NCBI RefSeq assembly: GCF_001194135.2
Contig: NC_069004.1
Location: 9,145,559 to 9,181,554 of the forward strand
Direction of reading: 5' to 3'
Source: Octopus bimaculoides
Taxonomy: Eukaryota
DNA length: 35,996 nt
In this document: positions 2,961 through 27,686 of the stretch, one piece after another
Position numbering within the stretch: the first letter of the stretch is position 1
How the letters are laid out: every line of letters starts with the position of its first letter
Notes under the pieces: generated by a model
What the model saw: only the letters and a program-made list of their open reading frames with translations
What the model was told of the DNA's origin: nothing
Database searches by the model: none
Made by a program: the position numbers and the translations under genes

Positions 2961-3920
2961 AATATCATCTGAAGAAACTATAAGACTAACCAAATAGGAT
3001 TCCTTTGTGGGGTGTTAGTGTTGCTGTAAATACTCATATTTCTCATGACCTGAAGATTACCCCCAGCCAGTTAGGTATTTATTGCTGAGTTCCTTCATCA
3101 AGGAGGACTTACTTTCAGTTCCCTCCGTTCCTCGAACAGACTCAACGACTCCAGCAAATACCTCAGATTCTGCACAATCCCGGCACACCAAATCAGGAAG
3201 AACAGTTCGATGGCCCGCAAGGTTTGTTCAAGTCTTTCGGGTAAGTTCAAACTCTTCCCTTACCCATCTTCTGAAATGAAATGCCAACATCAACACATAA
3301 CCTAAATGACTGCATCACCCGGATACAAACCAAAAGAAAACAACAAACATTTTGTATAAATTTTCTACATCAACAGAAAACAGTTTTATGAACATTGACT
3401 GAACATTTCACAGACAAACTTTTCCACAAACATTTTTCATTTTTCTGTCAATTCCTTGCCTGTACATATGTTTTGCTTTCTTTGAAAAATGTTTTGCCTT
3501 CTTATAAAGTGAAAAGGAGCTCTGACAGTACAGACAGAAAAAGAATGAGAAGAAAATGTTTAGTGAATGGTTTTTATCTTTAATGTGTGAAAGCAAGGCA
3601 GTGTCAAGTGGTGAGGATATTTTATCAAGAAAAATGCACTCAGTCCAGGCAGCAAAAATTATTTGTATGAGGAAGAGACATGAAAACACAATATCAAAGT
3701 TATGAACATACATGACCATGTTGGATGGTTTTTCTTCCCCTGTGTGTGCCAGCTGGTGAAAACCACAGTAGGTGATGAGATGAAAGGTGATGATGGATGG
3801 TGAGAAGCAGGCACCACATCCAACCAAACAGATGTAAAATGATGACAATGATAAAGACAGTGACATAAACAATGACGATGGCAAGAAACATTTTACCTAC
3901 ACTTTCTGTTCAAATAATGC

Positions 3921-3926
3921 TTTGTT
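3921..3926 (-). terminator. Variant hexamer AACAAA at the homologous poly(A) position of exon A
   Basis: Context GTGGAACAAAGCATTATTTGAACAG aligns with the other four copies but has a T>C change in the hexamer. Confidence 0.4.
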
Positions 3927-4188
3927 CCACAAAATAATATACGATACATATTATGCTTTGTGTGAAATCACTGATAGAAAAATCATTTCATTCTTTGTTT
4001 CTGAGTGAGACAATATTTATAATTTCAGTGAGTTTTTCTTTTTTGCCCGTGTTCCTTTTCTTCTTTTATTTATCCTACTTATTATTTTTTCTGAAATGCC
4101 TGGCCACAAATTTTTGTGTCAAAGAAGAATGTTTCAGAAATACGAAAGATAATATTCCTGTAGAATACATGAAAGCTAACATAGTGGA

Positions 4189-4723
4189 CTAAAGGTGACG
4201 TGTCTTTGGTTTTGCAAGTTCTGTTAATCGTTCACTAGCAACCACATGCTGTGTGGTGGGGTTCACTTTGAAAGGGTTGTATGTGACCTTACTCATTCTC
4301 CTAGACAGTGGTGTGCTTAGTTCTACCAGCCTTTGCGATATTTTCATTTTCAATGTCAACTTGTTAATGCGGTCCTGAATCTGTTGATTCACTCTGTTAC
4401 ATGAATGGCATGACTTTCTGACTGCTAGCCTTTCCAGCGTTGGACAGAATGTACCATTGCCAAAAGAGGCTCTTTTGCTATCATACAACTTACTTTTTTG
4501 AAATTCCGCAAGCCTACAAATTGAGTGACGTGGTATTGGTACAGCAAGTACATGAATTTGAGGTGATAGTATTGCATTTTTGGCTGAGGGTAGCACTTCA
4601 GATGGCACTGGTCTCACTCTTACAATATGTGGATGAAATTTCTTTGAAACTGCAAGGTGAATCACTCTTGGACTGCTATTAGCATTCAGAGCAGTGGTAG
4701 GCACTGGCCACTGGGCTGTTGCT
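4189..4723 (-). CDS. THEG: THEG-like terminal exon A (most distal); (R)ATAQWPVPTTALNANSS...ASERLTELAKPKTRHL*
   Basis: Same acceptor (CAG at 4726-4724) and phase. Intact frame to TAG. Repeats 2 and 3 have lost the core Arg. Confidence 0.78.
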
Positions 4724-4789
4724 CTGAAAGAAACACAAATTGTTTAATGAATGCTCTCTTTATTTTTCTCCTAGTATATGTATTTACAT

Positions 4790-5350
4790 AGCTTGTTTGA
4801 AGGAGAGGAGACTTTCAGGTTAGGGATAGAAGGCTGGGGTAAGAAGGGAAGACCTAAAACTGAAAATGGAATTGCTGACTTGTGAGAGAGGTTACAGAGT
4901 GTAAGGAGGGTCATTCATTTGTATTCATCAGTGTTGTGATTCCAAGTATGTTTAAGTGTAAGGGATTTTCTTTCTACTCCTCTGGATATGTGAAAATGCT
5001 GCACAGTGATGGATGAATGATGGTGCATATACCAACCCTGTTAATTTGTTTGTAAAATTTGCCAGAGAAAGAGAAAAGGGTTAGGATGAATTCATCTATG
5101 TTGAAGAACATAGCTGTGAACAGCAACCAAAATCCAGGAGGTGCTGTTATGCTAGGTGATAGACTGCTTTCTACACCACCAAAACTAATTATGGTCTACT
5201 GGACACAATTTGTGTATTGCAAATCTTTAGCAGACTTGACAGGATATGCTACATGTACAAATATGTCACATGTAGAAAGATGTCACATGTAGATTTTGTT
5301 AGAAAATAAAAATGCACTCAGTACAGGCTGCAAAAATGTCTGCATGCAAA
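4790..5350 (-). mobile_element. Deleted Penelope-like remnant and shared flank between exons B and A
   Basis: Shares the catcagtgttgtg segment with 6648-6660, shares the 3' end with the other spacers, and 5120-5346 matches 9329-9555. Confidence 0.45.
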
Positions 5351-5632
5351 ATAGCCATAAAAACATACCAGATTTAGGGCTATACACAAGAATATTGGAC
5401 ACCTTTTTTCTCCTTGAATATGCCAGCTGGTAGAAACCACAGTAAATGATGAGTCAAAGAATGAAGATGATCAGTGAATCAAACCAGACCCATCCAACCA
5501 ACCAATGAATATAAAAACATGAAACATGTAAAATGACTGCAGTAATAAAGACAAAGATAACAACAAAGACATTGACATAAACAATGATGATGGTAAGAAA
5601 CATTCCACCTATACTTTCTGTTGAAATAATGC

Positions 5633-5638
5633 TTTATT
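5633..5638 (-). terminator. Poly(A) signal AATAAA of exon B
   Basis: Same conserved context ~280 nt after the stop. Confidence 0.65.
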
Positions 5639-5917
5639 TCACAAAAATAATATATAAAATATATATTATGCTTAGTGTCTCATCACTAACACTCAAATTA
5701 TCTCATCATTTTTTTTTCTAACTGAGATGATATTTTTATATTTTGGAGTGGTTTCATTTTTCATACATTTCTTTGGTTTGCTTTGTTTTAAGGGATTTTT
5801 TCCCCCCTTCTTATTTTCTGAAATGCAAGTCCACACACTTTTGAAAAGAAAAAAATATTTCAAAGATTCGAAACATGAAGATTTCTGTAGAAAAGATTTA
5901 AAGTTAAAAGAGTTAAC

Positions 5918-6452
5918 TTAAAGTTGGTATTTCTTTGGTTTCGCAAGTTCCACTATTCGATCGCTAGCGACAGCATGCTGTGCAGAAGGGTTCACTTTGA
6001 AAGGCTCAAATGTGTTCTTCATCAGTCTCCTAGGATGTGGGCTGCTTAGTTCCTCTATTCTCGGTGATGGTACAGCAGTCAGTGCTGCCCTGGTAATGGG
6101 ACGCTGACTTGGTAGATTTGGTACAAAATTTGGATGCAATGACTTGCTGACTGCTAACTTCTCCAGCCTCGAATAAGTTGTACTACTGCTAACAGAAGCT
6201 GGTTTGATTGCATACAACTTACTTTTCTGACCTGGCTGAAGTTTAGTGCTTATTCTCCGCGGTACTGGTACAGAAAGTAAAAGAATTCGAGGTGAAGGTT
6301 TTACATTTCTAGCTGATATTGGCACTGCAGTTTGCACGGGTCTTGGTGCTATAAAAAGTGGATGAAATTTCTTTGAAACTGCAAGGTCAATCACTCTTGG
6401 ACTGCAAGTAGCATTCATGGCAGCGGAAGACACTGGCCACTGTGGTGATGCC
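5918..6452 (-). CDS. THEG: THEG-like terminal exon B; (R)ASPQWPVSSAAMNATCS...ASDRIVELAKPKKYQL*
   Basis: Same acceptor (CAG at 6455-6453) and phase. Intact frame to TAA. All five repeats keep the core Arg. Confidence 0.8.
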
Positions 6453-6559
6453 CTGAAAGAAACACAAATGCTTTAGTGAATGTTCTCTTCCTTTTTTTTT
6501 TTTTCTTAGTTTATTTATTTACATTGCTTTTTGAAGGAAAGGTTTTCAGCATGGGGTGA

Positions 6560-7780
6560 GAGGAAATGTTGGGGGTCAATTGAGGGAATAAATAGGATAA
6601 CTGAACTGGAAGTACATGAAGTTAAGGGTGGGACATTTATCTATACCCATCAGTGTTGTGGGGCAGGCAGGTTTGAGTGAGAGGGTGTAGATCTTTCTAT
6701 TTCCTTGGGTGTGTCGAGGTACTGCACATTGATGGATGGGGGATGGAGTGGCCTCCTGTGTTGAGTTGTGTCGCATATGTAGTGGTGTGGTTCAGGTATG
6801 TCTACAGAGGTGATCAACAATGCAATTGCCTGTTTCCCCAATATAAAATACACCATAGGATTTTGGGATGATACTGTAGTTGAGTTTTCATGATGTGCTG
6901 TGAATGTTTCGGGTGAAGTGGTGTTGTGGCCAGGACCCAATTATAATTGTGGTCTAGGTGATGTGGAGACAGGTGCATTTAAGGGCACTTGGTTGTGTGT
7001 GGATAGGTCCTGTGGAGCTTCAGTATAGGAGGTTACCAATGTTCCTGTCTTTCTTGGAAGTAGGGGAGTGATAAGAACTGCTGTTGGATTGGAGAATTAT
7101 ATTTGGGATTTGCAGACAATTGTGTTTTAGTAAGAGGGCAGATAGCTGTAGTAGGTGTCCATCTTGGAGCTGTGGATGTAGAGGGGTGGAAGAAGAGTGC
7201 CGCTGTCTCTAACCTGGCAGAAAAGAGTGCATGGGTACTATCAATTCAGGAAAAGTTTGCATTTTACTCATATTTGGGTTCAAAATTTTGATTCAATACT
7301 GCATAGTCAATGAAGCTGGTGGAATTTGGAGAATGGTGTAGCAGACTGTGTTTAAGATCTTAAAAGGAATAGTGGAGAGAGGAATGAGAAATATTGAAGG
7401 TGATGTTGAGAAAAGCAATTGATATATCAGTTATGATGAGAGTAAGTTCCAAGATGAGGTAAAAAGAGTTAAAAAAAAAAATGAAACTATCAATCTGTTG
7501 CCTGGTGAGAGTGATAGCACCAACAGGAGTTGGGCAAACACTTAATTCTTAATATACCCTACTAAAAAATTTGTGTAGGTGGGAGTCATATTGGTGCCCA
7601 TAGTGACACCACTAAACTGTTTGTAAAATTCTCCAGTGAAAGAAAAGAGGGAGGGAGGTTGATATCATTTAAGTGAAGGAATCAGACAGTGTTGTGTACA
7701 CATAGGTGCTGTCAAGTCTTGTAAGCTTTTAAAAGCTGATGACATTACCTATGGAAGATGACTGAATAGAGTGGTTTAAC
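6560..7780 (-). mobile_element. Decayed Penelope-like retroelement, paralog of 10780-12010
   Basis: FSFTGEFYKQFSGVTMGTNMTPTYTNFLVGYIK at ~7550-7650 (RT motif B). The endonuclease part is nearly identical to 10805-11188. Confidence 0.75.
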
Positions 7781-8219
7781 ATGCATAGTGAGATGGAGCT
7801 TTGACAGCACAGGGAGAAAAGAGAACAAGAAGGATTTAGTACATGGGTTTTATCTTTAATGTGTAAGTGTAAGGCAGTGTCAAGCGGTGATGATGTTCCA
7901 TCAAGAAAAATGCACTCGGTTCAGGCAACAACAACTATTTATATGAGGAACAGACAAAAAAAAACCTTACCAAAATTATGGACATACACAACCATGTTGA
8001 ATGGCTTTTCTTCCCCAGTGTATGCCAGCTGGTGATGAGACAAAGGATGATGAGGACACTGAGATAAATGCACCACATCCAACCAACCAAAGTAAAAAAA
8101 AATAAATAGATGTAAAATGATGATGATGATGATGATGACAAAGATGAAAACAAAGATATCCACATAGACAATGACGATGGCAAGAAACATTTCACCTATA
8201 CTTTCTGTTCAAATAATGC

Positions 8220-8225
8220 TTTATT
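8220..8225 (-). terminator. Poly(A) signal AATAAA of exon C
   Basis: Same conserved context ~295 nt after the stop. Confidence 0.65.
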
Positions 8226-8340
8226 TCACAAAATAATATATAATACATATTATCTTTTGTGTATAACCACTGATACAAAAATCATTTCATTCTTTTGTTT
8301 CTCAGTCAGACAATATTTATAATTTCAGTGAGTTTTTCTT

Positions 8341-8379
<39 letters not shown>

Positions 8380-8519
8380 CTATGTTCCTTTTCTTCTTTT
8401 ATTTTTCCTACTTATTTTTTCTGAAATGCCTGGCCACAAACTTTTGTGTCAAAGAAAAACGTTTCAGAAACACGAAAGATAAATATTCCTGTAGAAAACA
8501 TGAAAGCTAACATAGTGGA

Positions 8520-9054
8520 CTAAAGGTGGTGTGTCTTTGGTTTTGCAAGTTCTGTTAAACGTTCACTAGCAACCGCATGCTGTGAGGTGGGGTTAACTTT
8601 GAAAGGGTTGTATGTGTCCTTAATCAGTTTCCTAGACAGTGGTATGCTTAGTTCTACCAGCCTTGGTGGTGTTTTTATATTCAATGTTGACTTGGGAAAG
8701 GGCTGCTGAATCTGTTGACTCATTCTGTTATATGAACGAGGTAACTTTCTGATTTCTAAGATTTCCAGCTGTGAATAGTTTGTACTACTGCTAACAGAGT
8801 CTTTTTTGTCTTCATACAACTTACTTTTCTGAAATTCCACAAGCTTACACACTGAGTGACGTACTATTGGTACAGCAAGTACACGAAGTCGAGGTGATGG
8901 TTTTGCATTTCTGGCTGACAGTGACACTTCAATTGGCACTGGTCTTGATGCTACAAAATTTGGATGAAATTTCTTTGAAACTGCAAGGTTAATCACTCTT
9001 GGACTGCAATTAGCATTCAGGGCAGTAGTTGACACTGGCCACTGGGCTGTTGCT
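8520..9054 (-). CDS. THEG: THEG-like terminal exon C; (R)ATAQWPVSTTALNANCS...ASERLTELAKPKTHHL*
   Basis: Same acceptor (CAG at 9057-9055) and phase. Intact frame to TAG. About 65% aa identity to exon A by hand alignment. Confidence 0.8.
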
Positions 9055-9119
9055 CTGAAAGAAACACAAATTGTTTAATGAATGCTCTCTTTCTTTTTCT
9101 CCTAGCATATTTATTTACA

Positions 9120-9560
9120 TTGCTTGTTTGAAGGAGAGGAGGCTTTCAGGTGTGGGACAGAAGGAAAGGTTGGGAAAGATTTGCTATTCAATGTGGCCTA
9201 CAACAATCTTTGGATAAGTTGCACCCATGTTGGTGCTCACACCAATCCTGTTAATATGTCTGTAATATACTCCAGTGAAGAAAAAAAGGTTAGAATGGGT
9301 CCATCTATGTTGAGAGACATAGATATGTACAGCAACCAAAATCCAGGAGGTGCTGTTATGCTAGGTGATAGACTGCTTTCTACACCACCAAAACTAATTA
9401 TGGTCTACTGGACACAATTTGTGTATTGCAAATCTTTAGCAGACTTGACAGGATATGCTACATGTACAAATATGTCACATGTAGAAAGATGTTACATGCA
9501 GATTTTGTTAGAAAATAAAAATGCACTCAGTACAGGCTGCAAAAATGTCTGCATGAATAA
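9120..9560 (-). mobile_element. Internally deleted Penelope-like remnant between exons D and C
   Basis: 9185-9300 aligns with the RT motif-B region at 11830-11930. Its downstream end matches the 3' ends at ~4790, ~6525 and ~10740. Confidence 0.5.
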
Positions 9561-9846
9561 TGGTCATAAAAATCCAGCAAGATTAAGGACATACACAAGG
9601 AGGTTGGAAACCTTTAACTCTCCTTATATATATGCCAGCTGGTGGAAACCACAGTAAATCATGCGACAAAGAAATGATGATGATCAGTGAAACAAGCCAG
9701 ACCCATCCAACCAACCAATGAATGAAAAATGTAAACATGTAAAATGACGATAACGATGTTGAGGACAAAGATGATAGCAAAGACATCAACATAAACAATG
9801 ATGATGGTAAGAAACATTTTACCTATACTTTCTGTTGAAATAATGC

Positions 9847-9852
9847 TTTATT
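9847..9852 (-). terminator. Poly(A) signal AATAAA of exon D
   Basis: Same conserved context ~300 nt after the stop. Confidence 0.65.
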
Positions 9853-10148
9853 TCACAAAATAATATATAATATATATACTATGCTTAGTTATCTAATCAG
9901 TGACACTCAAATCATTTCATCATTTTTTTTTCTGACTGAAATGATATTTTATATTTTGGAGTGGTTTTGTTTTGATATATATATGTGTATATATATATAT
10001 ATATTTTTTTATTTGCTTCGGCTTTGTAGGGTTTGCTTCCTTCTTCTTTTTCTAAAATGCCCATCCACAGGGTTTAGAGAAAAAAAATATTTTTTAAATT
10101 CAAAACATGAAGACTTCTGTAGAATAGATGAAAGTAGAAATGGTGAAC

Positions 10149-10680
10149 TTAAAGTTGGTATTTCTTTGGTTTTGCAAGTTGCAATATTCGATCAGTAGCA
10201 ACCACATGCTGTGTGGTGGGGATCACTTTGAAAGGCTCAAATGTATTCTTAATCATTTTCCTAGAAGGTGGGGCACTTAGTTCTACTAGTCTCGGTGATG
10301 CTATAGCAGTCAATGCTGCCCGGGTAATGGGACGCTGTTTCTGTTGATTCGGGAGAAAATTTGGATGCAATGACTTGCTGACTGCTAACTTTTCCAGCCT
10401 TGGATAGGTTCTGCTGCTAACAGAAGCTTGTTTAACTTTATGCGAATTACTTTTCTCACCTTCCTGAATTTTAGTGGTTATTTTGCGCGGTACCGGAAGA
10501 GCAAGTACAATAATTCGAGGTGAAGGTTTTACATTTCTAGCTGACAATGGCACTTCAGTTTGCACGGGTCTTGGTGCTATAAAAAGTGGATGAAATTTCT
10601 TTGAAACTGCAAGGTCAGTCAGTCTTCGACTGCAATTAGCATTCATGGCAGCGGAAGACACTGGCCACTGTGGTGATACC
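10149..10680 (-). CDS. THEG: THEG-like terminal exon D; (R)VSPQWPVSSAAMNANCS...ATDRILQLAKPKKYQL*
   Basis: Same acceptor (CAG at 10683-10681) and phase. Intact frame to TAA with one in-frame codon deletion. About 74% aa identity to exon B by hand alignment. Confidence 0.8.
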
Positions 10681-10779
10681 CTGAAAGAAACACAAATGGT
10701 TTAATGAATGCTCTCTTCCTTTTTTATGTATATTTACGCTGCTTGTTTGAAGGAAAGGAAGCTTTCAGCATGGAAGAGG

Positions 10780-12010
10780 AGGAAAGTTTAAGGTGCCAGG
10801 GGGTATAAATAGGATAACTGAACTGGAAGTACATGAAGTTAAGGGTGGGACATTTATCTATACCCATCAGTGTTGTGGGGCAGGCAGGTTTGAGTGAGAG
10901 GGTGTAGATCTTTCTATTTCCTTGGGTGTGTCGAGGTACTGCACATTGATGGATGGGGGATGGAGTGGCCTCCTGTGTTGAGTTGTGTCGCATATGTAGT
11001 GGTGTGGTTCAGGTATGTCTGCAGAGGTGATCAACAATGCAATTGCCTGTTTCCCCAATATAAAATACACCATAGGATTTTGGGATGGTACTGTAGTTGA
11101 GTTTGCATGATGTGCTGTGAATGTTTCGGGTGAAGTGGTGTTGTGGCCAGGACCCAATTAAAATTGTGGTCTAGGTGATGTGGAGACAAGTGTTGCATCA
11201 TTACTGAGTGCATTTAAGGGTACTTGATTGTGTGTGGATAGGTGCTGTGGAGCTTCAGTATAGGAGGTTACCAATGTTCTTGTCTTTCTTGGAAGTAGGA
11301 AGTGATAAGAACTGCTGTTGGATTGGAGAATCATATTTGGGGTTTCTATAGGAGAGTGGATGGCTGTAGTAGGTGTCCAACATGTGGGTTTGCTTGTAGA
11401 AGGATGGGAGAACGGTGCCACTATGTACAGCCTGTCAGAAAAGAGTGCAGAGTCCACAACTGATTGTGGGTACTCTTAGTTCTTGGAGAAATGTTGCATT
11501 TTCTCATATTTAGGTCCAAATTTTGATTCAGTGTTGCATAGTCAATGAAGTTGATGAAATTTGGAGAATGATATGGCAGATTGAGTGTGTTTAAGGTCAG
11601 AGGAATTGTGGAGAGAAGAGTGATAATTGATGATGGAGATATTGAGAAAAATAAGATATGTAAGATATTGAAGGAGTGTAAATTCAAAGGTTAGGTTAAA
11701 GGAATTAATAAAAGAGATGAACCTATCAAACTGCTGCCTGGTGAGAATGGTAACACTGAAACAGTTATTAATAAACAACCATTCAGCTTTGGATCGTGTC
11801 CTGTGTGTTGAGAAAATATCTGCTTTTCAATATGGCCTACAAAGTGTTTTGCGTAACTAGGGTCCATCTTGGTGTTCATAGTGATACCACTGAGTTGTAT
11901 GCAAAATTCTCCAGTGAAGGAGGAATGGGTTTGGACAAGTTCATCTAAATGGAAGAATGTGATAGCGTTCTGGACAGGCAGAGGCTGGTGGTTCCAATAT
12001 CCACCAAACA
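10780..12010 (-). mobile_element. Decayed Penelope-like retroelement (RT + GIY-YIG endonuclease remnants)
   Basis: Frameshifted pieces QLSGITMNTKMDPSYAKHFVGHIEKQIF (RT motif B), FINNC...QFDRFISFINSF (decayed YIDD region) and IGETGNCIVDHL...PTTLMGID (GIY-YIG C-terminus) resemble Penelope-type ORFs. Boundaries approximate. Confidence 0.75.
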
Positions 12011-12015
12011 TATGT

Positions 12016-12074
<59 letters not shown>

Positions 12075-12287
12075 CGTACACACACACACACACACACGAT
12101 ATATCATTATCATCATCATTTAACATCTATCTTCCATGATGGCATGGGTTGGACAGTTTGACGGGAGCTGGCAAGTCAGAGGGCTGCACCAGGTTCCAGT
12201 TGTCTGTTTTGGCAACGTTTCTATGGCTAGATGCCCTTCCTAACACCAATTACTTTACAGAGTGTACTGAGTGCATGGAAATATATA

Positions 12288-12340
<53 letters not shown>

Positions 12341-12363
12341 ATCATCAATAATATATATATACA

Positions 12364-13244
12364 CAAGGTGCGATGGGTAAATTGTTACCATTTTATATTT
12401 TTCATTTCGCAAATGCACATTGTTTGTTTTTGATTTTGTCGACTACACAGTATAGTAGGGTTACTATACAGTTGAGCACTGTATGTTAGTAAAACAGTAC
12501 CGTGACGCAATTCACCCAGCCAGAAATTTGGGAACGACATGATGTACTGCTTGGCATTCACACTCGAAGCTGCAATACGAACATTTCAGAGTGTTTTGAT
12601 ATCAGTCTGAGGACATGTACCGAGAGTGATAAAGATAAAGCATCCAGTCAACATCATGGTGTTTGGAGTGATCACTAGTGATGGCAATGTTATGCCTCCA
12701 TTTAACATTCTCACATCACCTCAGACTCAACACGGATGCCTACATCAAGTGCCTGGAAGAGGTAGTGTTGCCCTGGGTTAAGAAGGTAGCTGCTGGAAGA
12801 CCCTATGTCTGACAACAGGACTCTATATCATGTCACACAAGCAGGAGAACTCAGTCATGGTTATCAGACAATTTCTGCGACCACATCACCCCTAACATCT
12901 GGCCACCTAACTCCCCAAACTGCAATCCCTTGATTATTATGTGTGGGGCACAATTGAGCAAGAGACCAACAAAACTCTTTGTAACACCAAAGATGAGTTG
13001 AAGGTAAGGATTATGGCAGCATTCACCAACCTAAACAAGGGGACTGTTCAGAATAGTTGCAGGAGATTCCAAAGTCGTCTGGAGGCCATGGTTGATGTCA
13101 TTGGCGATTTTATTGAATAAATTTACTCTTTAGTATTTCAAGATATTTTAATGCAATTTTGGTAAATATATCTGTTAAAATGAGATGTCAAGTGTTATTT
13201 TCATTTTTGCGTAATTTAGATGACAGTTTATTCACCGCACCCTG
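12364..13244 (+). mobile_element. Non-autonomous maT (DD37D Tc1/mariner) DNA transposon inserted into the Penelope remnant
   Basis: Imperfect TIRs CAAGGTGCGATGGG ... TTCACCGCACCCTG followed by TA. The transposase C-terminal remnant includes QQDS...IWPPNSPNCNPLD, with the family's 37-residue spacing. Confidence 0.8.
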
Positions 13245-13246
13245 TA

Positions 13247-13313
<67 letters not shown>

Positions 13314-13321
13314 ATAAAATC

Positions 13322-13360
<39 letters not shown>

Positions 13361-13968
13361 ATTAGTTATGGGGGAGACAATTTCAATGCCTCTGAAAATG
13401 GTGGAAGAAAGAAAGTAGTAGTTATTCTTTGACCAAATATCTGAACCAAATGTTTGAAACAAGTGGAATCTATTAATGGCAGCCAAAATCCAGGAGGTGA
13501 TATTAAGCCAAATGTTCAGTTACTGTCTACACTACCAAAAATAAGAATGGTCTGTTGTACACAATTTGAGTGTTGCAAATTTACATGGACTTGATTGGAT
13601 ATGCTCCATGTAGATAGATTCCACATGCAGATTTTGTTAGAAAATAAGAATGCACTCAGTACAGGCTGCAAAAATGTTTGCATGAGGATTGGCCATAAAA
13701 GCTGCCAAAATTACAGACACACACAAGGAGGTTGGACGCCTTTTCTCTCCTTGAATACGCCAGCTGGTAGAAACCACAGTAAAAAATGAGACAAAGGATG
13801 ATGACAAGTGAAACAAGAGGAGACTCATCGAACCAACCAATGAAAAAAGCATGTAGATATGTAAAATGATGATGACAATGTCAAAGACAAAGATGATAAG
13901 AAAGACATCAACACAAACAATGATGATGGTAAGAAACATTCCACCTATACTTTCTGTTGAAATAATGC

Positions 13969-13974
13969 TTTATT
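13969..13974 (-). terminator. Poly(A) signal AATAAA of exon E
   Basis: Conserved context GTGAAATAAAGCATTATTTCAACAG ~290 nt after the stop, followed by GU/U-rich sequence. Confidence 0.65.
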
Positions 13975-14263
13975 TCACAAAATAATATATAAAATATATA
14001 TTATGCATAGTTATCTAATCTCTAACACTCAAATCATCTCATCTTTTTTTTTTTTTTGTGACAGAGATGATATTTTATGTTTTGGTGTGGTTTCATTTTC
14101 ATATTTCTTTTCTGTTTTTTGTGGGGAGGTTTTTTTAATTTTTTTTTTTATTCTCATTTTTCTGAAATGCTGTCCACACACTTTTGGCCAAAAAAAAAAT
14201 GACATTTGTAAACCTTGAAACATGAATATTCATATAGAATAGATGAAAGTTTAAAATATTGAA

Positions 14264-14780
14264 CTAAAGGTGATGTGACTTTGGTTTTGCAAGTTCCCTT
14301 AAGCGTTCACTAGCAACCACATGCTGTGTGGTGGGGCTCACTTTGAAAGGGTTGTGTGTTTCCTTAACAAATCTCCTAGAAGGTGGAGCGCTTAGTTCTC
14401 CCACTCTTGATGAAGCTGTCTTGAGAGGTAGGGGGTAAATCAATTGACTCGTGCGAGTAGGAAGTAACAACTTGCTTATTCCTAACTTTTCCAATCTTGC
14501 ACTAGTTGTACTGCTGCTAATAGAAGCTTGTCTAATTTCATACAACTTGCGTTTCTGAAATTCCTCAAGTTTAGCAGTTACTTTGCGTGGTACCGGTGCA
14601 GCAAGTACACGAATTCGATGTGATGGTATTGCATTTCTGGCTGATATTGGTACTTCAGTTTGCACTGGTTTTGGTTCTAGAAATTGTGGATGGGGTTTCT
14701 TTGAAACTGCAAGGTCAATCACTCTCGGACTGCAATTAGCATTCAGGGCAGCAGTAGACACTGGCCACTGGGCTGACTCT
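14264..14780 (-). CDS. THEG: THEG-like terminal exon E (most proximal); (R)ESAQWPVSTAALNANCSPRVIDLAVSK...ASERLRELAKPKSHHL*
   Basis: Acceptor TTGTGTTTCTTTCAG at 14781, phase 2, and open to TAG. It holds five S-x-R-(ILV)-x-x-L-(AS)-x-(PS)-K repeats spaced ~30-40 aa, resembling the THEG repeat. It has an in-frame 6-codon deletion relative to the other copies. The ORF-track M is a GTG inside the exon. Confidence 0.8.
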
Positions 14781-14944
14781 CTGAAAGAAACACAACTTGT
14801 TTTATGAGAAAGACTAAGATTGGCTGTCGTTTATATCAGAGTTCGGCAAAGGGGTCAATATTCATTATCCGAGTGGTCAATAAACACCTGAAACAATTTG
14901 TGCATTTGGTGTGTTGAATTATTCTCAATATAACATGACAGGAT

Positions 14945-15175
14945 TTAAAGTGGTGAACTGGTTGAATCAATAGCATGCCAAGCATAATTCTTGGCAGCAT
15001 TTCATCCATCTTTACATTCTGAGTTCAAATTCCACTGAGGTTGACTTTGCCTTTCATCCTTTCGGAATTGATAAAATAAGTACCAGCTGAACATTGTAGT
15101 CGATATAATCGACTTACCTTCATCCCCGAAATTGTTGGCCTTGTATCAATATTTGTATCAAAATTTGAAATCAGT
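14945..15175 (+). repeat. SINE-like interspersed repeat
   Basis: TTCTGAGTTCAAATTCCACTGAGGTTGACTTTGCCTTTCATCC...AAATAAGTACCAG; a related minus-strand copy lies at ~18000-18120. Confidence 0.6.
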
Positions 15176-15923
15176 ATAATATGAGTTGAATTTTAAGTAT
15201 TTTCAAGAAATTTCTTATCAGAAAGTGGTTAATGATACAAAAGAACACATGAACTGTTGTTGTTTCTTTTTCTTTGTAATGGAAAAAATTTTTTATAATA
15301 CTTTTCGATTCTATTATAGAAATTTCCACGATAGAAGTCAATAAGTTCTCGACAATTCCATAAAGGGGCCAATAATATTAGGAACTGGCTGACCCTCAGT
15401 TTTGATGATCATTTCCACAAGTACCTTTACTATTTTGAGAACATCACCCAGTCGTTCTCAAAATCTATTGAAACACCTTTCTGTTTATGAAATCCCCTTA
15501 AATCACAATTTGACCTTCATTTGCAAAAACAGGGAACGATACAGAATTTTTTTCCCTAGCATGCCTTTCTTTCCCTTGTTTAATGAGAGCATGCTAGATG
15601 AAAACTTAAGTCATCATTATACAAAAACAGATCTTTGTTTATTAATCGATGTCTGTAAATATGTCTAATTATTGAGCCGTTCGCTGTCTAAAAGATAACA
15701 TGAAATATTACCTGACTTGGCAACAGGTGAGAGTGGATTCACATCAGGAAGAACACCTGGCTGAAAAAAAAAACCTGCTTCAACAACATTTGTCAGATTA
15801 GAACCACGTAACCGTGTAAGCATGACAAGAGGACATTAAACAGATGATGATGACAATGATGGTGGTGGTGGTGGTGGTGGTGGTGGTTGAGGCACTGGTG
15901 AAAAGAAAAGAATTCAAACATAC

Positions 15924-15990
15924 CTGGGTGGAACATATCTTGCGTGTAATTGCTTGGATTGAGAAAGAACCATAAGTCTTTGAGACACTG
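15924..15990 (-). CDS. THEG: Constant internal exon (67 nt, phase 1 to phase 2) of the THEG-like gene, (A)VSQRLMVLSQSKQLHARYVPP(R)
   Basis: Acceptor TATCTTTACCATTCTCTCTAATCTGCAG and donor CCCAG|GTATGT. The translation is a THEG-type repeat that aligns with SPRVIDLAVSKKFHPLFIAPR of the terminal exons. Its final AG joins the first base (A or G) of each terminal exon to make Arg (AGA/AGG) in frame. Confidence 0.8.
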
Positions 15991-16919
15991 CTGCAGATTA
16001 GAGAGAATGGTAAAGATATAGTGTGTTAAAAGTGGATCGCTACACATTTGTGCATGTGTGTGTGTGTGTGAATATGTGAGAATGTGTATGCATAGCCTTG
16101 CGTATCTCTGAGACTGAGTGTGTCTCTCCTTGCTGTCATTTAACCCTAGGTTAGCCCTAATCCTGTAGACCTATGACCAAAAACACTCCAGATGTGACCA
16201 TCCCTTTCTTTCTTTTTTTTTTAAGTGCATCTGAATGACCTTATCCAATATGTCCTTTCAACTTCTAAAATTTTTTTGTAAGACAGCAGTGATACAGGGG
16301 AGACATAGCTGCTATTTCTAGCAAGTCAAAGGAACCTGTACAGCAATGGCACTCAATCTTTTTAACTTCATGTGGTATTAGAGATCGGGCACTAATGATC
16401 AGTTTTCAAATTGACTGATATTCTTGCCTATATATATATATATATGTATGTATGTATGTATTATTTATTTAAAAGCAGCAGAAATGTAACAAAAAACTGT
16501 TACTCGGAGTTTCACGTTCCCGTTCATTGGACAGTTTTGTTAGAAAATCTAACAAAGCTGTCCGATGAACGGGAACATGAAACTCCGAGTAACAGTTTTT
16601 TGTTATATTTCTGCTGCTTTTAAATAAAGCATATTACTCTACCTCTGGTATTTGAGTACTCTTTTTTCTACCTTGTTGCACATTTATGTGCTTACTCCGG
16701 TNNNNNNNNNNNNNNNNNNNNNNNNNNNNNNNNNNNNNNNNNNNNNNNNNNNNNNNNNNNNNNNNNNNNNNNNNNNNNNNNNNNNNNNNNNNNNNNNNNN
16801 NNNNNNNNNNNNNNNNNNNNNNNNNNNNNNNNNNNNNNNNNNNNNNNNNNNNNNNNNNNNNNNNNNNNNNNNNNNNNNNNNNNNNNNNNNNNNNNNNNNN
16901 NNNNNNNNNNNNNNNNNNN

Positions 16920-17945
16920 AGAATTGGTCCATTCATACTGGCCATCTTTCCAACATTCACCACCTTTCAACAAATTTGCCATGAGACAATACTTCTGTCT
17001 CTGCTCTCACCTTCCTTTTCAAGTGGAATTTGAAAAAGTTGATGAGGCCTTGGCCAAAGAGGAAAGTGTCTGACTTTAGCCCTTTCAAACGGGTCCACCA
17101 TACCACCTCTTTTGCTAAAGCCACCAGACAAATGAAAATTGCCTTTCCCTCCCGGTTAAAAGTCAGTGGGGTAATCTTCACTATGGATTCAGCTGATAGC
17201 CGGATCCGTCTTACACGCGACAGTAGCTTTTCAACATAAACCCACAGGTCAGCAATACTCGGGCACTGGACGAGTGCGTGCAGAATGATTTCGTTGCTCT
17301 GAGTGCACCTCAGGCAGGCCTGGCTGATGGCACGTCCGTGCTGGTAGAGTTTATCCCGAACAGGCAGCGCCCCTCGGTAGCAGTGTCAGGCAAGGGACTT
17401 TTGGAAGTTATCCATGGGCCTCGGCCTGAAAGTTCCGCCAAATAGACTGCTTAGCTGGTCATCGTCGACACCTAGAGTTTTCCTGAGAATGTCATCACAC
17501 TTTTCCTGCACTAACCCTTTATAGAACGCTAGAGTGGAACTACTACTGATCGCATTGCAGGCCTGTCGGAGGGCGGTGAGAGCTTGACAGCACTCGAGGT
17601 GCGAAGCGCCCTTTCCTAGTCTATGTTTGATCCAAGATTGCAGCTCAATCAAAGATACGAGCTGTGAAAAGGAGAGCCTGACGAACGGCGACCACACCTG
17701 CTTACCATCCAGGAAAGGCTTGGGATGCCGTAGCCTGAGTGAATGTCTGCACATCAGCAACCACGGCAGGCCCAGACCTCTGCTCAGTGGCTGTTGACAG
17801 CAGATGGAGCACCCCTTCCACAGACAGTCAAAGAGCAAGCGTACCAGCTTGGCCAACCAGCAGTCAGGACGAGGGACGACAGTCAAGCGGTAATAGATGA
17901 CGGATGTGATGTACGCATTCGCCATAAAAATGGTTTCAAATTTTG
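16920..17945 (-). mobile_element. Tx1/L1-clade LINE 3' fragment (post-RT region with CCHC knuckle)
   Basis: ANAYITSVIYYRLTVVP...LFDCLWKG...GLGLP..., then CLRCTQSNEIILHALVQCP (CCHC) and IFICLVALAKEVVWW. Interrupted by a stop. Confidence 0.8.
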
Positions 17946-18502
17946 GGACCAGGCCCCAGGAATTTTAATGGAGGAGTTAAGTCAATTACATCAACCCCAG
18001 TGTTCAACTGGTACTTATTCTACTGACTCTAAATGGATGAAGGTCAAACCTGACCCCCAGCAGTATTTGAATCCAGAACATAAAGTATTTTGTCCAAAAT
18101 GCCAATCTGCCAGGTTGTCACCATCACTGATGATGATGATGATGATGGCGATGATGATGAGGATTTCTTTTATTGGCCACAAGGACCCAAGACATGGAGG
18201 ACAATATTGAAGGATAAGTTACAGCACAAAAAAATGTAAACTGACTGGCTGGTGTAGTGTGTTCTTGAGCAAGGCACTTCATTTCACATTGCTCCAGTTC
18301 CCCTTTTTCTATCAGTGGGGAATGTTGGCCTGCTCACCTAGCCATCAGGGTGTCATTATTTGAAGGCTAAAACAATACAAAAGCACATTGTGACCAGCGA
18401 TGTGTAACAACATCTGATAGCCTGGTCGGTCATGTGATCATGCGATAAATAAACCAGAATTACATTTGACAGAATAATCCGAATACTAAAAGGTTAACTT
18501 AC

Positions 18503-18506
18503 CCAT
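18503..18506 (-). CDS. Candidate start-codon exon end (ATG + G, phase 1) of the THEG-like gene; 5' boundary unknown
   Basis: Minus strand reads CAGCCAGCATC-ATG-G|GTAAGT, with a perfect donor, A at -3 and G at +4. Phase 1 matches the 67-nt exon at 15990 (G|CA = Ala), giving MAVSQRL... Additional exons could lie in the N-gap at 16702-16919 or further upstream. Confidence 0.5.
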
Positions 18507-18549: not shown

Positions 18550-18652
18550 AATTCACTGCTGGGGTATATGAATCCCTGCTGGAGTATATAACTCACTGCT
18601 AGTGTGTATATACCTCACTGCTAGTGTGTATAATTCGCTGCTGATGTATAAT
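18550..18652. repeat. Five degenerate ~20-22-bp tandem units (ACTCACTGCTAGTGTGTATA-like)
   Basis: Directly visible tandem units ~45-150 nt upstream of the candidate ATG on the minus strand. Confidence 0.7.
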
Positions 18653-18754
18653 AATTGAGGCAGATCTGTTTGTGAGTAAAAAAAATATAAATAAATAAAT
18701 AACGAAATAAAAGCAACAATGTTAAACTGATATATTCTTTTTACGCTTTTACTT

Positions 18755-19143
18755 GTTTCAGTCATTTGATTGTGGCCATGCTGGAGCACCGCCTTTAGTT
18801 GAGCAAATCGACCCCAGGACTTATTCTTTGGAAGCTTAGTACTTATTCTATCATACTCTTTTGCCGAACCGCTAAGTTACGGGGACGTAAACACACCACC
18901 ATCGGTTGTCAAGCGATGCTGGGGGGACAAACACAGACACACAAACATATACACACACATACATACATATACATATATACGACGGGCTTCTTTCAGTTTC
19001 TGTCTACCAAATCCACTCACAAGGCTTTGGTCGGCCTGAGGCTATAGTAGGAGACACTTGCCCAAAGTGCCACGCAATGGGAATGAACCCGGAACCATGT
19101 GGTTGGTAAGCAAGCTACTTACCACACAGCCACTCCTGCGCCT
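18755..19143 (-). repeat. Full-length tRNA-derived SINE
   Basis: Same head as 1967, central (TA/CA)n tract, and tail shared with 22900-23120. Confidence 0.75.
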
Positions 19144-20490
19144 ATGACACATTTTTTTTACAGATTTTGGCAGAAAAATCTCCCATATTTTACATAGCTA
19201 CTGCTTTGGTGCTAGTAAAGTCAAGTAGTTTATAATAATCCTTTCTACTTTAGACACAAGGCCTGAAATTTGTGGGCTGACAATAACCTCAATGAATGGA
19301 AAATATTTGTCAACACATGCCTTCTTGCAGACAAAAGAGTTCTCATGCTTGGCTTGTTACTATGGAAAAAGACATGAATGTGTCAGTGGCTTACGATTGG
19401 TTAAAATTACCCCAAATTTGCAAACTTTAAAAGCTAATAACTCTTTATTTATCGATTCATTGTGAAAATGAATCTGAAACCATGTTATTATACTGAATAT
19501 GAAATCAGTTTGAGCAGAAATTGAAGAGATTGAAAACTGGCAGCCAAAGAGAATAGATCTCCTCTTCCTTGCCATCCTCTGAGGCAAATTCCTCTTCCAT
19601 TTTGTCTGTAGAGACCATGAAATAGACTGACAAGCCTTTTTAGATATTACTTGTTATTTATTGTTTTATTCACCAATATATTTAGATAACTTCAAAACTG
19701 TTTCTCACTGACACAATATTGAATAATGAAACCTTTTTACGCACCTGCACTAGTTTTACCAAAACGTAAATTTTCCACTTCCTGTCTTCAGTGAAACTCT
19801 TAGAATATTCCAGAAACTTGATTTGTTTTTTTTATTTTCTTTAGTTTTTTTTCTCCTCCCCTTTTAGTTCTAAAAGCATAAAAAAAAGTAGTTGCATTCA
19901 TAAAAGATGGAATCAACAGACGGACAATTCTATTACCTGCCAGTGGCATGCAGTCTGGCACTGAATGCCCGTTGATTTTTATATAACTCGAAAATCAATT
20001 TAAGAATGTAATGTATTTATAACCACATTGAAAAGTTGTCCAAATCACTGGAAACTGAGTTAAAATAGTTATTTGGTTTCAAAGGGGATCCATCCAGATT
20101 GATACTTTGCTGTGTTTCCATTTTACTTCCACTAGGCATGCTTAAAGAAAAATGCATAGGAAATCTTTTGTCCCCCATTTCCTATCTTTCAATAACTATC
20201 ATTTCAATGCCTGTAAGATTCTTTTTCATCTCCATAAAATAACTACAGAAGGCACGTTTTGGCTTCCCCTCCCTTTCTATCAGTTCCTCTTTGTCAACAA
20301 TTCTTTGTAATTGATGTCACTAATGCAATAGGCTAAATGGTCAAATGGGTTTGACTTTTTGACCCCTAAAAATTCTGACTGAAACATATCAACAATCCCT
20401 TAATTCTTAATGAGTCAGCTCAAATGTTGCTGTGACTCTGGAATATCTATTTCACTCTGTTGTAAGTTTTGAAATTATTATTATTATTAA

Positions 20491-22630: not shown

Positions 22631-22802
22631 AGGTGCAGGAGTGGCTATGTGGTAAGTAGCTTACTTACCAACCACATAGTCCTGGGTTCAGTTCCACTGC
22701 ATGGTACCTTGAGCAAGTGTCTTCTATTATAGTCTCAGGCGAACCAAAGCCTCATTAGTGGATTTGGTAAACAGAAACTGAAAGAAGCCTATCGTGTGTG
22801 TA

Positions 22803-22891
<89 letters not shown>

Positions 22892-23125
22892 GTATATATC
22901 TATGTGTGTGTGTCTTTGTGTCTGTGTTTGTACCCCCATTACCACTTGACAACCGGTGTTGGCGTGTTTACATTTCCATAACTCAGTAGTTCAGCAATAG
23001 AGACTGATAGAATAAGAACTAGGCCTAAAAAATATGTCCTGGGGTAGACTTGTTTGACTCAAAACCTCTCAAGGAGGTGCTCCAGCATGGCTGCAGTGAA
23101 ATGACTGAAACAAATAAAAGAATAT
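22631..23125 (+). repeat. Full-length tRNA-derived SINE with expanded central (TA)n
   Basis: Head, microsatellite and tail collinear with 18755-19143. A further minus-strand tail fragment lies at ~22075-22330. Confidence 0.75.
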
Positions 23126-26511: not shown

Positions 26512-26707
26512 NNNNNNNNNNNNNNNNNNNNNNNNNNNNNNNNNNNNNNNNNNNNNNNNNNNNNNNNNNNNNNNNNNNNNNNNNNNNNNNNNNNNNNNNN
26601 NNNNNNNNNNNNNNNNNNNNNNNNNNNNNNNNNNNNNNNNNNNNNNNNNNNNNNNNNNNNNNNNNNNNNNNNNNNNNNNNNNNNNNNNNNNNNNNNNNAT
26701 ATATACA

Positions 26708-27557: not shown

Positions 27558-27686
27558 TATGTGTGTATGACATAGAAATCCATAACAATCTGACTAAGGA
27601 GGCTTCTAACATTGAAGGTGGGCTCTATAGAGTTGAAACTTTGAAGGAAATTTGGCTGATATTTCTAGCAGGGTGAGAAACTACAC

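What the first reader, a model, noticed from the sequence alone, without database searches (positions are those of the whole stretch)
3921..18506. Constant-5'/variable-3' array: one THEG-like gene with five tandem alternative terminal exons
Seen in sequence: the five 165-171 aa 'ORFs' have no ATG start. Each begins 19 nt downstream of an identical TGTGTTTCTTTCAG acceptor in phase 2 and carries its own stop, ~280-nt 3'UTR and poly(A) hexamer. I found only one copy of the upstream 67-nt exon (15990-15924), and its AG end makes Arg in frame with all five. The spacers contain only UTR, shared flank, transposon remnants and simple repeats, with no recognisable promoter or upstream exon. Established knowledge: THEG/SPMAP2 proteins are testis-expressed repeat proteins linked to sperm microtubules, and Drosophila lola and mod(mdg4) use common 5' exons with arrays of alternative 3' exons. 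Inference: one gene makes five ~195-201-aa isoforms sharing a 24-aa N-terminus, chosen by mutually exclusive acceptor/poly(A) use. I am not aware of this architecture for a THEG-family gene.
Basis: partly seen in the sequence, partly recalled or inferred. Interest (0 to 1): 0.92.

Follow-up and report, generated by a model that had tools for sequence, protein, structure and literature searches.

The report
Octopus THEG gene's alternative last exons
A sperm-tail protein gene of the two-spot octopus has two tiny shared exons followed by five duplicated alternative final exons; the layout is real, but NCBI already annotates four of the five as isoforms X1-X4 and the architecture is a well-known type.

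Summary
The core observation holds. Five paralogous THEG (PF14912) exons lie on the minus strand. Each sits behind an identical TGTGTTTCTTTCAG acceptor in the same phase. There is one copy of a 67-nt exon (15990-15924) and one ATGG exon (18506-18503). The assembly gap lies in intron 1 and touches no coding sequence.

The window is Octopus bimaculoides chromosome CM046624.1. RefSeq already models one gene with four isoforms: X4=E, X3=D, X2=C, X1=B. Their CDS spans match the window coordinates exactly. O. sinensis has the same ordered array.

Copy A is the exception. It is not annotated. Its acceptor and ORF are intact and the ORF is conserved in O. sinensis.

The acceptor and poly(A) blocks are the most conserved parts of each unit. 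The coding sequence evolves almost neutrally (pooled dN/dS 0.86) yet never loses frame.

"Private first exons" used by older gene models are poorly supported. No Dscam-like docking/selector pairing was found.

This is a 3' tandem-cassette (alternative last exon) gene, a known class.

The parts
18553..18643 (-). Putative core promoter / 5' flank. It holds 4-5 tandem 20-22-nt units (CAGCAGTGAnnTATATAC) 47-137 nt upstream of the ATG.
   Evidence: TRF. The region is 95% identical to O. sinensis against a locus background of about 86%. Promoter function is inferred, not shown.
18503..18506 (-). Coding part of constant exon 1 (ATG G), followed by donor gtaagt. The 5'UTR extends upstream, and the TSS is unknown.
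   Evidence: Sequence. The RefSeq proteins start with MA, which requires ATG+G joined to CA of exon 2.
15991..18502 (-). Intron 1. It contains the assembly gap 16702-16919, a LINE fragment (about 16920-17950) and an 86-nt-arm foldback (16459-16633).
   Evidence: (zf-RVT 30.1 bits against cut-off 27.5). The O. sinensis intron 1 is 23.5 kb.
15924..15990 (-). Constant exon 2, 67 nt. It encodes (A)VSQRLMVLSQSKQLHARYVPP plus the first two bases of Arg. The acceptor is ctgcag| and the donor is |gtatgt.
   Evidence: It is unique in the window. It is 94% identical in O. sinensis, with 3 synonymous and 1 non-synonymous change. It is present in all RefSeq isoforms.
13969..14780 (-). Terminal cassette E. 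CDS 14780-14264 (stop 14266-14264); AATAAA at 13974-13969. This is RefSeq isoform X4.
   Evidence: The cassette contains no Met codon at all.
9847..10680 (-). Terminal cassette D. CDS 10680-10149; AATAAA at 9852-9847. This is RefSeq isoform X3.
8220..9054 (-). Terminal cassette C. CDS 9054-8520; AATAAA at 8225-8220. This is RefSeq isoform X2.
5633..6452 (-). Terminal cassette B. CDS 6452-5918; AATAAA at 5638-5633. This is RefSeq isoform X1.
3921..4723 (-). Cassette A. CDS 4723-4189 has an intact acceptor and ORF. The conserved poly(A) hexamer is mutated to AACAAA (3926-3921), and an alternative AATAAA lies at 4070-4065. It is not annotated as an isoform.
   Evidence: (the joined protein is not in the collection). 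The ORF is conserved in O. sinensis with in-frame indels only.
6874..6978 (-). Candidate 'private first exon' type 1 upstream of B. A homolog lies upstream of D at about 11219-11091. It is used only by O. sinensis model XP_036368976. The donor CA|GTATCA is weak.
   Evidence: It has no THEG similarity, and its flanks are as conserved as the segment itself.
9240..9320 (-). Candidate 'private first exon' type 2 upstream of C. A homolog lies upstream of A at 5111-5030. It is used by the 2015 model A0A0L8HJN6.
   Evidence: An in-phase GT donor exists only in O. bimaculoides copy C. The four homologous copies read GT|ATGAGC or GT|ATATGC / GT|ATGTGC.

Best explanation
This is one transcription unit of the Octopus bimaculoides THEG-like (sperm microtubule-associated protein 2-like) gene. 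A promoter lies just above 18506. Two short constant exons follow: ATGG, then 67 nt. Then comes a tandem array of duplicated terminal cassettes in the order E, D, C, B, A. Each cassette has its own 3' splice site, about 175 codons of THEG repeats, a stop codon and a poly(A) site.

Splicing the single exon-2 donor (15924|15923) to one acceptor, plus cleavage at that cassette's poly(A) site, yields mutually exclusive mRNAs. These encode 195-201-aa proteins that share 24 N-terminal residues.

Shown here: the sequence anatomy, the identity with four public RefSeq isoforms, and conservation in a second and third octopod.

Inferred:
- Cassette choice is positional/kinetic, a competition between 3'ss and poly(A) sites of near-identical strength. 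It is not RNA-pairing directed.
- The proteins decorate sperm axonemal doublet microtubules.
- Cassette A is at best weakly used in O. bimaculoides, because its conserved AATAAA is destroyed.
For: 1. RefSeq isoforms X1-X4 equal N24+B, C, D and E exactly. They share a start, and their spans match the window coordinates.
2. There is only one exon 2 and one exon 1 in 36 kb. Both are 95% conserved against about 86% background.
3. Cassette E has no Met. C and A have none until past codon 100, so they cannot be translated alone.
4. The acceptor TTGTGTTTCTTTCAG is identical in all 5 O. bimaculoides copies, all 6 O. sinensis copies and the 3 cassettes recovered from a third octopod. The first exon base is always a purine, which keeps Arg.
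5. Across 11 units, conservation peaks at the acceptor (0.93) and the poly(A) block (0.90). It falls to 0.53-0.70 in mid-exon and 0.1-0.6 in the 3'UTR.
6. The THEG periodicity runs through the exon2/cassette junction as it does in bovine THEGL from PDB 8OTZ (query 7-87, 30.4 bits, i-E 3.8e-6). In sea-urchin THEGL from 8SNB the match covers query 9-196 (E 1e-16).
7. The ORFs are kept by selection. All 5 exonic indels between species are multiples of 3, while 35 of 44 flank indels are not. P(no stop) is 0.06-0.17 per cassette under random substitution. A third species shows the same pattern.
8. The array order E-D-C-B-(B')-A is collinear in O. sinensis.
Against: - No RNA data could be examined here, so junction use rests on Gnomon models whose evidence I cannot see.
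- That annotation is fallible at this locus. O. sinensis isoforms X1 and X3 are E/C chimeras with non-canonical junctions. An older O. bimaculoides model concatenated three cassettes into 487 aa. O. sinensis annotates cassette B as a separate gene with its own first exon.
- Cassette A is unannotated and lacks the conserved AATAAA.
- Protein-level constraint is weak (dN/dS 0.59-1.27), so coding function relies on the ORF-maintenance argument.
Confidence: 0.8

Rival explanations
1. The cassettes are a tandem family of independent two-exon genes. Each is transcribed from its own promoter, with a private first exon in the spacer. The shared-exon isoforms would then be annotation artefacts or minor products.
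For: - The 2015 UniProt model A0A0L8HJN6 gives cassette C a private 27-aa first exon.
- O. sinensis RefSeq XP_036368976 gives cassette B a private 32-aa first exon.
- Homologs of these segments exist upstream of several cassettes in both species. The type-1 ORF stays open, with in-frame 9- and 21-nt indels.
- The 400 nt upstream of each acceptor is more conserved (92.8%) than the exons (87.9%).
Against: - The type-2 in-phase GT donor exists in only 1 of 5 homologous copies.
- The type-1 donor CA|GTATCA is weak. All 5 substitutions between species are non-synonymous, and the flanks are equally conserved.
- Neither segment has THEG similarity, and both would interrupt the repeat periodicity seen in solved homologs.
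- E has no candidate private exon and no Met.
- In O. bimaculoides, B and C are modelled from the shared exons.
Confidence: 0.1
2. Only the proximal cassette or cassettes are really used. The distal copies are silent duplicated relics, and the X1-X3 models arise from multi-mapping reads among paralogs.
For: - Near-neutral protein evolution (pooled dN/dS 0.86).
- Demonstrable paralog-chimera artefacts in O. sinensis models.
- A is unannotated and has a damaged poly(A) signal.
Against: - All 11 ORFs in two species, plus 3 in a third, are open and carry only in-frame indels. The joint probability under neutrality is about 1e-5 for stops times 3e-4 for indels.
- Acceptor and poly(A) blocks are frozen in distal copies as much as in E.
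- Cassettes differ by 14-30% in nucleotide sequence, so unique mapping is easy.
- All four O. bimaculoides models use canonical GT-AG junctions.
Confidence: 0.07
3. The array is an assembly artefact: haplotypes or reads were stacked in tandem around the gaps.
For: The window has five N gaps, one of them inside the gene.
Against: - The copies are 70-86% identical to each other, not allelic.
- The gap-free O. sinensis assembly has the same ordered array, with one-to-one orthologs at 85-91%.
- A third species has distinct E-, B- and D-type cassettes.
- No gap lies between the cassettes.
Confidence: 0.02

Closest known systems
RefSeq gene models for this very locus: O. bimaculoides 'testicular haploid expressed gene protein' isoforms X1-X4 (XP_052832213-216), and O. 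sinensis isoforms X1-X4 (XP_036368680, -682, -683, -684)
   Same: They have identical exon 1, exon 2 and cassettes B, C, D and E. The protein sequences match the window translation residue for residue.
   Different: Cassette A is not modelled, nor are A and B' in O. sinensis. O. sinensis X1 and X3 are chimeric models, and its cassette B is called as a separate gene.
3' tandem cassette clusters / 3' variable regions, e.g. Drosophila PGRP-LC, CG42235 and Pip (Pan et al. 2018, PMC6191721, citing Hatje & Kollmar)
   Same: The 3' terminal cassette is duplicated behind constant exons. Each copy has its own 3'ss, stop and poly(A) site, giving mutually exclusive C-termini and 3'UTRs.
   Different: Those fly genes use docking/selector RNA pairings. 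No such complementarity above shuffled controls was found here. The protein family and the animal phylum also differ.
Drosophila lola and mod(mdg4)
   Same: They have constant 5' exons plus an array of alternative 3' exons.
   Different: Those genes combine a BTB constant region with zinc-finger/FLYWCH variable exons, and mod(mdg4) needs trans-splicing from the opposite strand (from my own knowledge, not checked here). Here the only domain is THEG, and all cassettes are on one strand in transcription order. The variable exons also make up almost the whole protein.
THEG/SPMAP2 and THEGL/SPMAP2L, including the THEG-like chains in sperm doublet-microtubule structures 8OTZ (bovine) and 8SNB (sea urchin)
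   Same: They share PF14912 repeats. The match is E 1e-16 to 8SNB_8A over residues 9-196 and E 7e-15 to 8OTZ_Dn. 8SNB is the 48-nm sea-urchin doublet (PMC10973386).
   Different: The octopus proteins are shorter: about 200 aa against 268-450 aa. They are also made from alternative paralogous terminal exons. I found no such description for THEG genes elsewhere in the literature searched.

Membership tests
THEG / SPMAP2 protein family (Pfam PF14912) | THEG repeats scoring above Pfam's gathering threshold | tested here: met
   All five cassettes score 81.6-126.2 bits against a cut-off of 27, with 2-3 repeat stretches each.
THEG / SPMAP2 protein family (Pfam PF14912) | Sequence homology to THEG-like proteins resolved in sperm axonemal doublet microtubules | tested here: met
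   phmmer gives 8SNB_8A at E 1.1e-16 and 8OTZ_Dn at E 7e-15.
THEG / SPMAP2 protein family (Pfam PF14912) | Testis or spermatid-specific expression and axonemal localisation | not testable with these tools
3' tandem cassette cluster (alternative last exons by duplication) | A single constant upstream donor shared by all cassettes | tested here: met
   Exon 2 is unique in 36 kb. There is also one orthologous copy in O. sinensis.
3' tandem cassette cluster (alternative last exons by duplication) | Two or more homologous tandem terminal exons, each with its own 3' splice site in the same phase and its own stop codon | tested here: met
   There are five cassettes with identical 15-nt acceptors and the same phase, and each has its own stop.
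3' tandem cassette cluster (alternative last exons by duplication) | Each cassette has its own poly(A) signal | tested here: inconclusive
   E, D, C and B share a perfect 23-nt AATAAA block. A has AACAAA there and only a non-homologous AATAAA at 4070-4065.
3' tandem cassette cluster (alternative last exons by duplication) | Mutually exclusive mature mRNAs observed | not testable with these tools
   Only the annotation is available. Four RefSeq isoforms exist, and no transcript contigs were found in the Logan-derived proteins.
Competing-RNA-pairing (docking/selector) controlled clusters (Dscam exon 6, PGRP-LC) | A docking site in the intron after the constant exon, complementary to selector sequences upstream of each variable exon | tested here: not met
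   Ungapped helix scan: 48-97 of 100 shuffles reach the observed score. Gapped duplex energies fall within the shuffle range and show no shared docking site. Only D is marginal.
lola / mod(mdg4) type loci | BTB constant region with variable zinc-finger/FLYWCH exons; opposite-strand cassettes needing trans-splicing (mod(mdg4)) | tested here: not met
   Pfam finds only THEG. All cassettes lie on the minus strand in transcription order.
Independent tandem gene family | Each copy has its own start codon or first exon with conserved splice donor | tested here: not met
   E has no Met. The type-2 donor is in phase in only 1 of 5 copies. The type-1 donor is weak and shows no coding signature, so it remains inconclusive for B and D only.

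The most novel reading that the evidence does not exclude
The array may be a diversity generator for a sperm axonemal microtubule protein under sexual selection. The processing signals (acceptor, poly(A) block, constant exons) are frozen. The cassette coding sequences are kept open but change at or above the neutral rate (pooled dN/dS 0.86, and 1.25-1.28 in the central third). The unannotated cassettes (A here, A and B' in O. sinensis) would also be used, so individual sperm or axoneme regions would carry different THEG isoforms.
Probability: 0.15. Interest if true: 0.55.

Novelty: already known. Interest (0 to 1): 0.2.

Why it matters
The result confirms that the public four-isoform model of this octopus sperm-protein gene is anatomically sound, and that the older conflicting models are not. 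These are the 487-aa concatenation, the private-first-exon models and the chimeric O. sinensis isoforms.

It flags one intact cassette in O. bimaculoides (A) and two in O. sinensis (A and B') that are still unannotated.

It also gives a clean example in which splice and poly(A) signals are far better conserved than the protein they serve. That is mildly useful for studying alternative-last-exon evolution and fast-evolving reproductive proteins. It does not reveal a new kind of system.

Tried and rejected
1. Hidden copies of the 67-nt exon in the spacers. blastn-short (word 7), tblastn (word 2) and an HMM of the cassettes against all six frames found none.
2. Dscam/PGRP-LC-style docking/selector pairing between intron 2 and the 400-500 nt upstream of D, C, B and A. 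An ungapped helix scan and RNAduplex were run in both species. Scores sat inside the shuffled controls and no common docking site emerged. The first attempt timed out.
3. The private first exon of UniProt A0A0L8HJN6 (type 2). Its donor is not conserved in phase.
4. The private first exon of XP_036368976 (type 1). Its ORF is conserved, but so are the flanks, the donor is weak, and the substitutions are all non-synonymous. It is not excluded for B and D.
5. O. sinensis X1 and X3 as evidence that cassette E can be an internal exon. The junctions are non-canonical and lie at homologous positions, so they were rejected as chimeras.
6. Homology of the shared N-terminus to the N-terminus of annelid THEG-like proteins. 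The match is visually suggestive, but BLASTP does not extend into it.
7. Logan contigs as cDNA evidence. All four retain intron and flank, so they are genomic.
8. Literature on THEG in cephalopods. None was found, and the hits were text noise. The third species (SRR11869391/85) could not be identified.
9. One Pfam call failed because of frame errors and was rerun.

Full report
**Observation**

The minus strand of the window carries five paralogous ORFs with GTG as the first start codon:
- A, 4189-4704
- B, 5918-6433
- C, 8520-9035
- D, 10149-10661
- E, 14264-14761

The 14-mer TGTGTTTCTTTCAG occurs exactly five times, against 0.05 expected by shuffling. Each occurrence ends 19 nt upstream of a GTG. 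In each copy the reading frame stays open from the base after the AG. The first exon base is A or G, so an upstream exon ending in AG yields Arg. All five translations are THEG repeats, PF14912, at 82-126 bits against a cut-off of 27.

The 67-nt exon at 15990-15924 has a ctgcag| acceptor and a |gtatgt donor. It is unique in the 36 kb by nucleotide search, peptide search and an HMM search. It encodes VSQRLMVLSQSKQLHARYVPP(R), which is itself a THEG half-repeat. The finding's upper boundary, 18506, is the ATG of a first exon ending ATGG|gtaagt.

**The assembly gap**

N 16702-16919 lies inside intron 1 (18502-15991). On its upstream side in gene orientation is a truncated non-LTR retrotransposon, with a zf-RVT match of 30.1 bits against a cut-off of 27.5. 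On the other side, about 70 nt away, is an 86-nt-arm foldback at 16459-16633. No coding base is near the gap, so reading frame is not affected.

The exon1-exon2 join across the gap is validated by the gap-free O. sinensis ortholog. Both exon regions there are 95% identical, and the same 24 residues are encoded with one substitution. Intron 1 in O. sinensis is 23.5 kb, so the true length here is unknown.

**Identity of the locus**

A protein search returned Octopus proteins. Exact look-ups show that the window is O. bimaculoides GCA_001194135.2, chromosome CM046624.1. RefSeq models one gene, 'testicular haploid expressed gene protein', with four isoforms sharing one start:
- X4, XP_052832216, 195 aa = N24+E
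- X3, XP_052832215, 200 aa = N24+D
- X2, XP_052832214, 201 aa = N24+C
- X1, XP_052832213, 201 aa = N24+B

Their CDS spans are 4243, 8358, 9987 and 12589 nt. These equal 18506 minus the stop coordinates 14264, 10149, 8520 and 5918, plus one. The N24+A protein is not in the collection.

**Structure and history of the array**

Self-comparison shows:
- A~C at 80% (3508-4833 vs 7787-9164)
- B~D at 83% (5017-7520 vs 9227-11756)
- E~B/D at 76%

O. sinensis has the same array in the same order, E, D, C, B, an extra B', then A. The blocks are collinear at 85-87% identity. Each cassette is closest to its ortholog, at 85-91%, so the array predates the species split. Genomic contigs from a third octopod (SRR11869391/85, species not identified) carry E-, B- and D-type cassettes.

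**What is conserved**

Across the 11 units, mean pairwise identity peaks at three places:
- the acceptor (0.93)
- the first ~100 nt of the exon (0.85-0.91)
- a ~70-nt block around an AATAAA 280-300 nt past the stop (0.90)

Identity falls to 0.53-0.70 in mid-exon and to 0.1-0.6 in the 3'UTR. The 15-nt acceptor is identical in all 14 copies seen.

Between species, the exons (87.9%) are less conserved than the 400 nt of intron upstream (92.8%) and equal to the 3' flank (88.6%). Yet all 5 exonic indels are multiples of three, whereas 35 of 44 flank indels are not. The third species shows the same pattern.

Ortholog dN/dS values are:
- E 0.94
- D 0.59
- C 1.27
- B 0.67
- A 0.96
- pooled 0.86, with 1.25-1.28 in the central third and 0.52 at the C-terminal repeat

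Random-substitution simulation gives P(no stop) of 0.06-0.17 per cassette. Jointly with the indel pattern, neutrality is rejected for the set. For A alone the combined probability is about 0.003. The cassettes are therefore fast-evolving but genuinely coding.

**Copy A**

Its acceptor and ORF are intact, and the ORF is conserved in O. sinensis. But the otherwise invariant 23-mer TTTTGTGAAATAAAGCATTATTT carries two mismatches only in A, turning the hexamer at 3926-3921 into AACAAA. The four cassettes with a perfect block are exactly the four RefSeq isoforms.

**Rival: private promoters and first exons**

Two public models use spacer exons.
- UniProt A0A0L8HJN6 gives cassette C the N-terminus MSLNIDGPILTFFSSLEYITDILTGLV, encoded at 9320-9240.
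- O. sinensis XP_036368976 gives cassette B the N-terminus MYLSLHHNYIWVLATTPLHPKHSQHIMQTQIQ.

Homologous segments exist upstream of C, A and B', and upstream of B and D, in both species. For the first type, an in-phase GT donor (GT|GTGAGC) exists only in O. bimaculoides C, and the four other copies lack it. For the second type, the ORF and a weak donor (CA|GTATCA) are kept, but the flanks are equally conserved and all five interspecies substitutions are non-synonymous. Neither segment resembles THEG.

In contrast, the THEG periodicity runs straight through the exon2/cassette junction, as in bovine THEGL of PDB 8OTZ (…[34 protein letters not shown]; query 7-87, i-E 3.8e-6) and sea-urchin THEGL of 8SNB (query 9-196, E 1e-16). 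Cassette E has no Met at all. I give the private-promoter model about 0.1 as the main mode. It is not excluded as a minor mode for B and D.

**Cautions on the annotation**

O. sinensis isoforms X1 and X3 are E/C chimeras whose junctions lack GT-AG and sit at homologous positions. An older O. bimaculoides model (XP_014772091, 487 aa) concatenated E, part of C and B. The four current O. bimaculoides isoforms all use canonical junctions. I could not inspect RNA evidence, and no spliced transcript contig was found.

**Mechanism of choice**

A Dscam/PGRP-LC-type docking/selector pairing was tested and not found. The 3' splice sites and poly(A) blocks are near-identical between cassettes. I therefore infer positional/kinetic competition between splicing and cleavage, but this is not shown.

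**Comparison with known systems**

Pan et al. [quoted passage not shown] This locus meets the structural criteria of that class.

It resembles lola/mod(mdg4) only by analogy. There is no BTB domain and no opposite-strand cassette.

By sequence it is a bona fide THEG/SPMAP2-like gene related to proteins resolved in sperm doublet microtubules. 8SNB is the sea-urchin 48-nm doublet (PMC10973386). No paper on THEG in cephalopods was found.

**Verdict**

The core observation is confirmed, with one factual error (A's hexamer). The claimed novelty is not there, because the gene models are already public and the architecture is a known kind. Interest is low (0.2). The residual points of interest are the unannotated cassettes and the contrast between frozen processing signals and near-neutral protein evolution.

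Noticed in passing
window 16459-16633: A near-perfect foldback sits in intron 1 about 70 nt from the assembly gap. It has 86-nt arms, 93% complementarity and a 3-nt loop. It could be a MITE-like element or an assembly artefact near the gap.
   Followed up: partly
window 16920-17950 (minus strand): A truncated non-LTR retrotransposon lies in intron 1, in the same orientation as the gene. It has a zf-RVT domain (30.1 bits) and an upstream 179-aa ORF (17386-17925). It runs into the N gap.
   Followed up: partly
window 18553-18643: Four to five tandem 20-22-nt units (CAGCAGTGAnnTATATAC) lie 47-137 nt upstream of the start codon. They are 95% conserved in O. sinensis. They could be promoter elements or transcription-factor sites.
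   Followed up: partly
window 18735-19147; also 22629-23124 and 1968-2124: A high-copy interspersed repeat of about 410 nt, SINE-like. It has roughly 20 copies at 84-93% identity in the 50-kb O. sinensis locus, mostly inside its 23.5-kb intron 1.
   Followed up: no
L002 46685-47216 and 48403-48964 (O. sinensis): Two further intact cassettes have the same acceptor and an AATAAA but are not annotated in RefSeq. They are B' (a C-like 5' half with a B-like 3' half) and A-like (with a 10-11-codon in-frame tandem duplication that repeats the ARPLPTKIAKP stretch, and a 5-residue C-terminal extension YSSQC past the position of the O. bimaculoides stop).
   Followed up: partly
L002, O. sinensis isoforms X1 (XP_036368680) and X3 (XP_036368683): These RefSeq isoforms switch from the E-like to the C-like cassette at homologous positions, with no GT-AG. 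They are probably chimeric transcript or assembly artefacts.
   Followed up: yes
L002 39372-39550 vs 44961-45140 (O. sinensis D and B cassettes): Residues 2-59 of sD and sB (58 aa) are identical, and the upstream type-1 segments are 97% identical. The 3' halves differ, which suggests a recent gene-conversion tract.
   Followed up: no
window 12363-13251 vs 26701-27558: An inverted 890-nt repeat pair at 82.7% identity, flanked by (TA)n microsatellites. It also matches O. sinensis L002 36387-37243. It is probably a transposon remnant in the E-D spacer.
   Followed up: no
window 9124-9657 (+ strand): A 177-aa ORF lies on the opposite strand in the D-C spacer. It overlaps the conserved far-3' flank of cassette D. 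It has no significant Pfam match.
   Followed up: partly
window 28025-28293 and 28676-28789: GTG/GTA-rich 18-21-nt and 48-nt tandem repeats with strong GC skew (0.57). They give a low-complexity poly-Val/His ORF at 28594-29085.
   Followed up: no
window 15840-15885 (minus strand): A (CCA)n/(CAT)n microsatellite starts about 40 nt after the exon-2 donor. It is conserved in position in O. sinensis.
   Followed up: no
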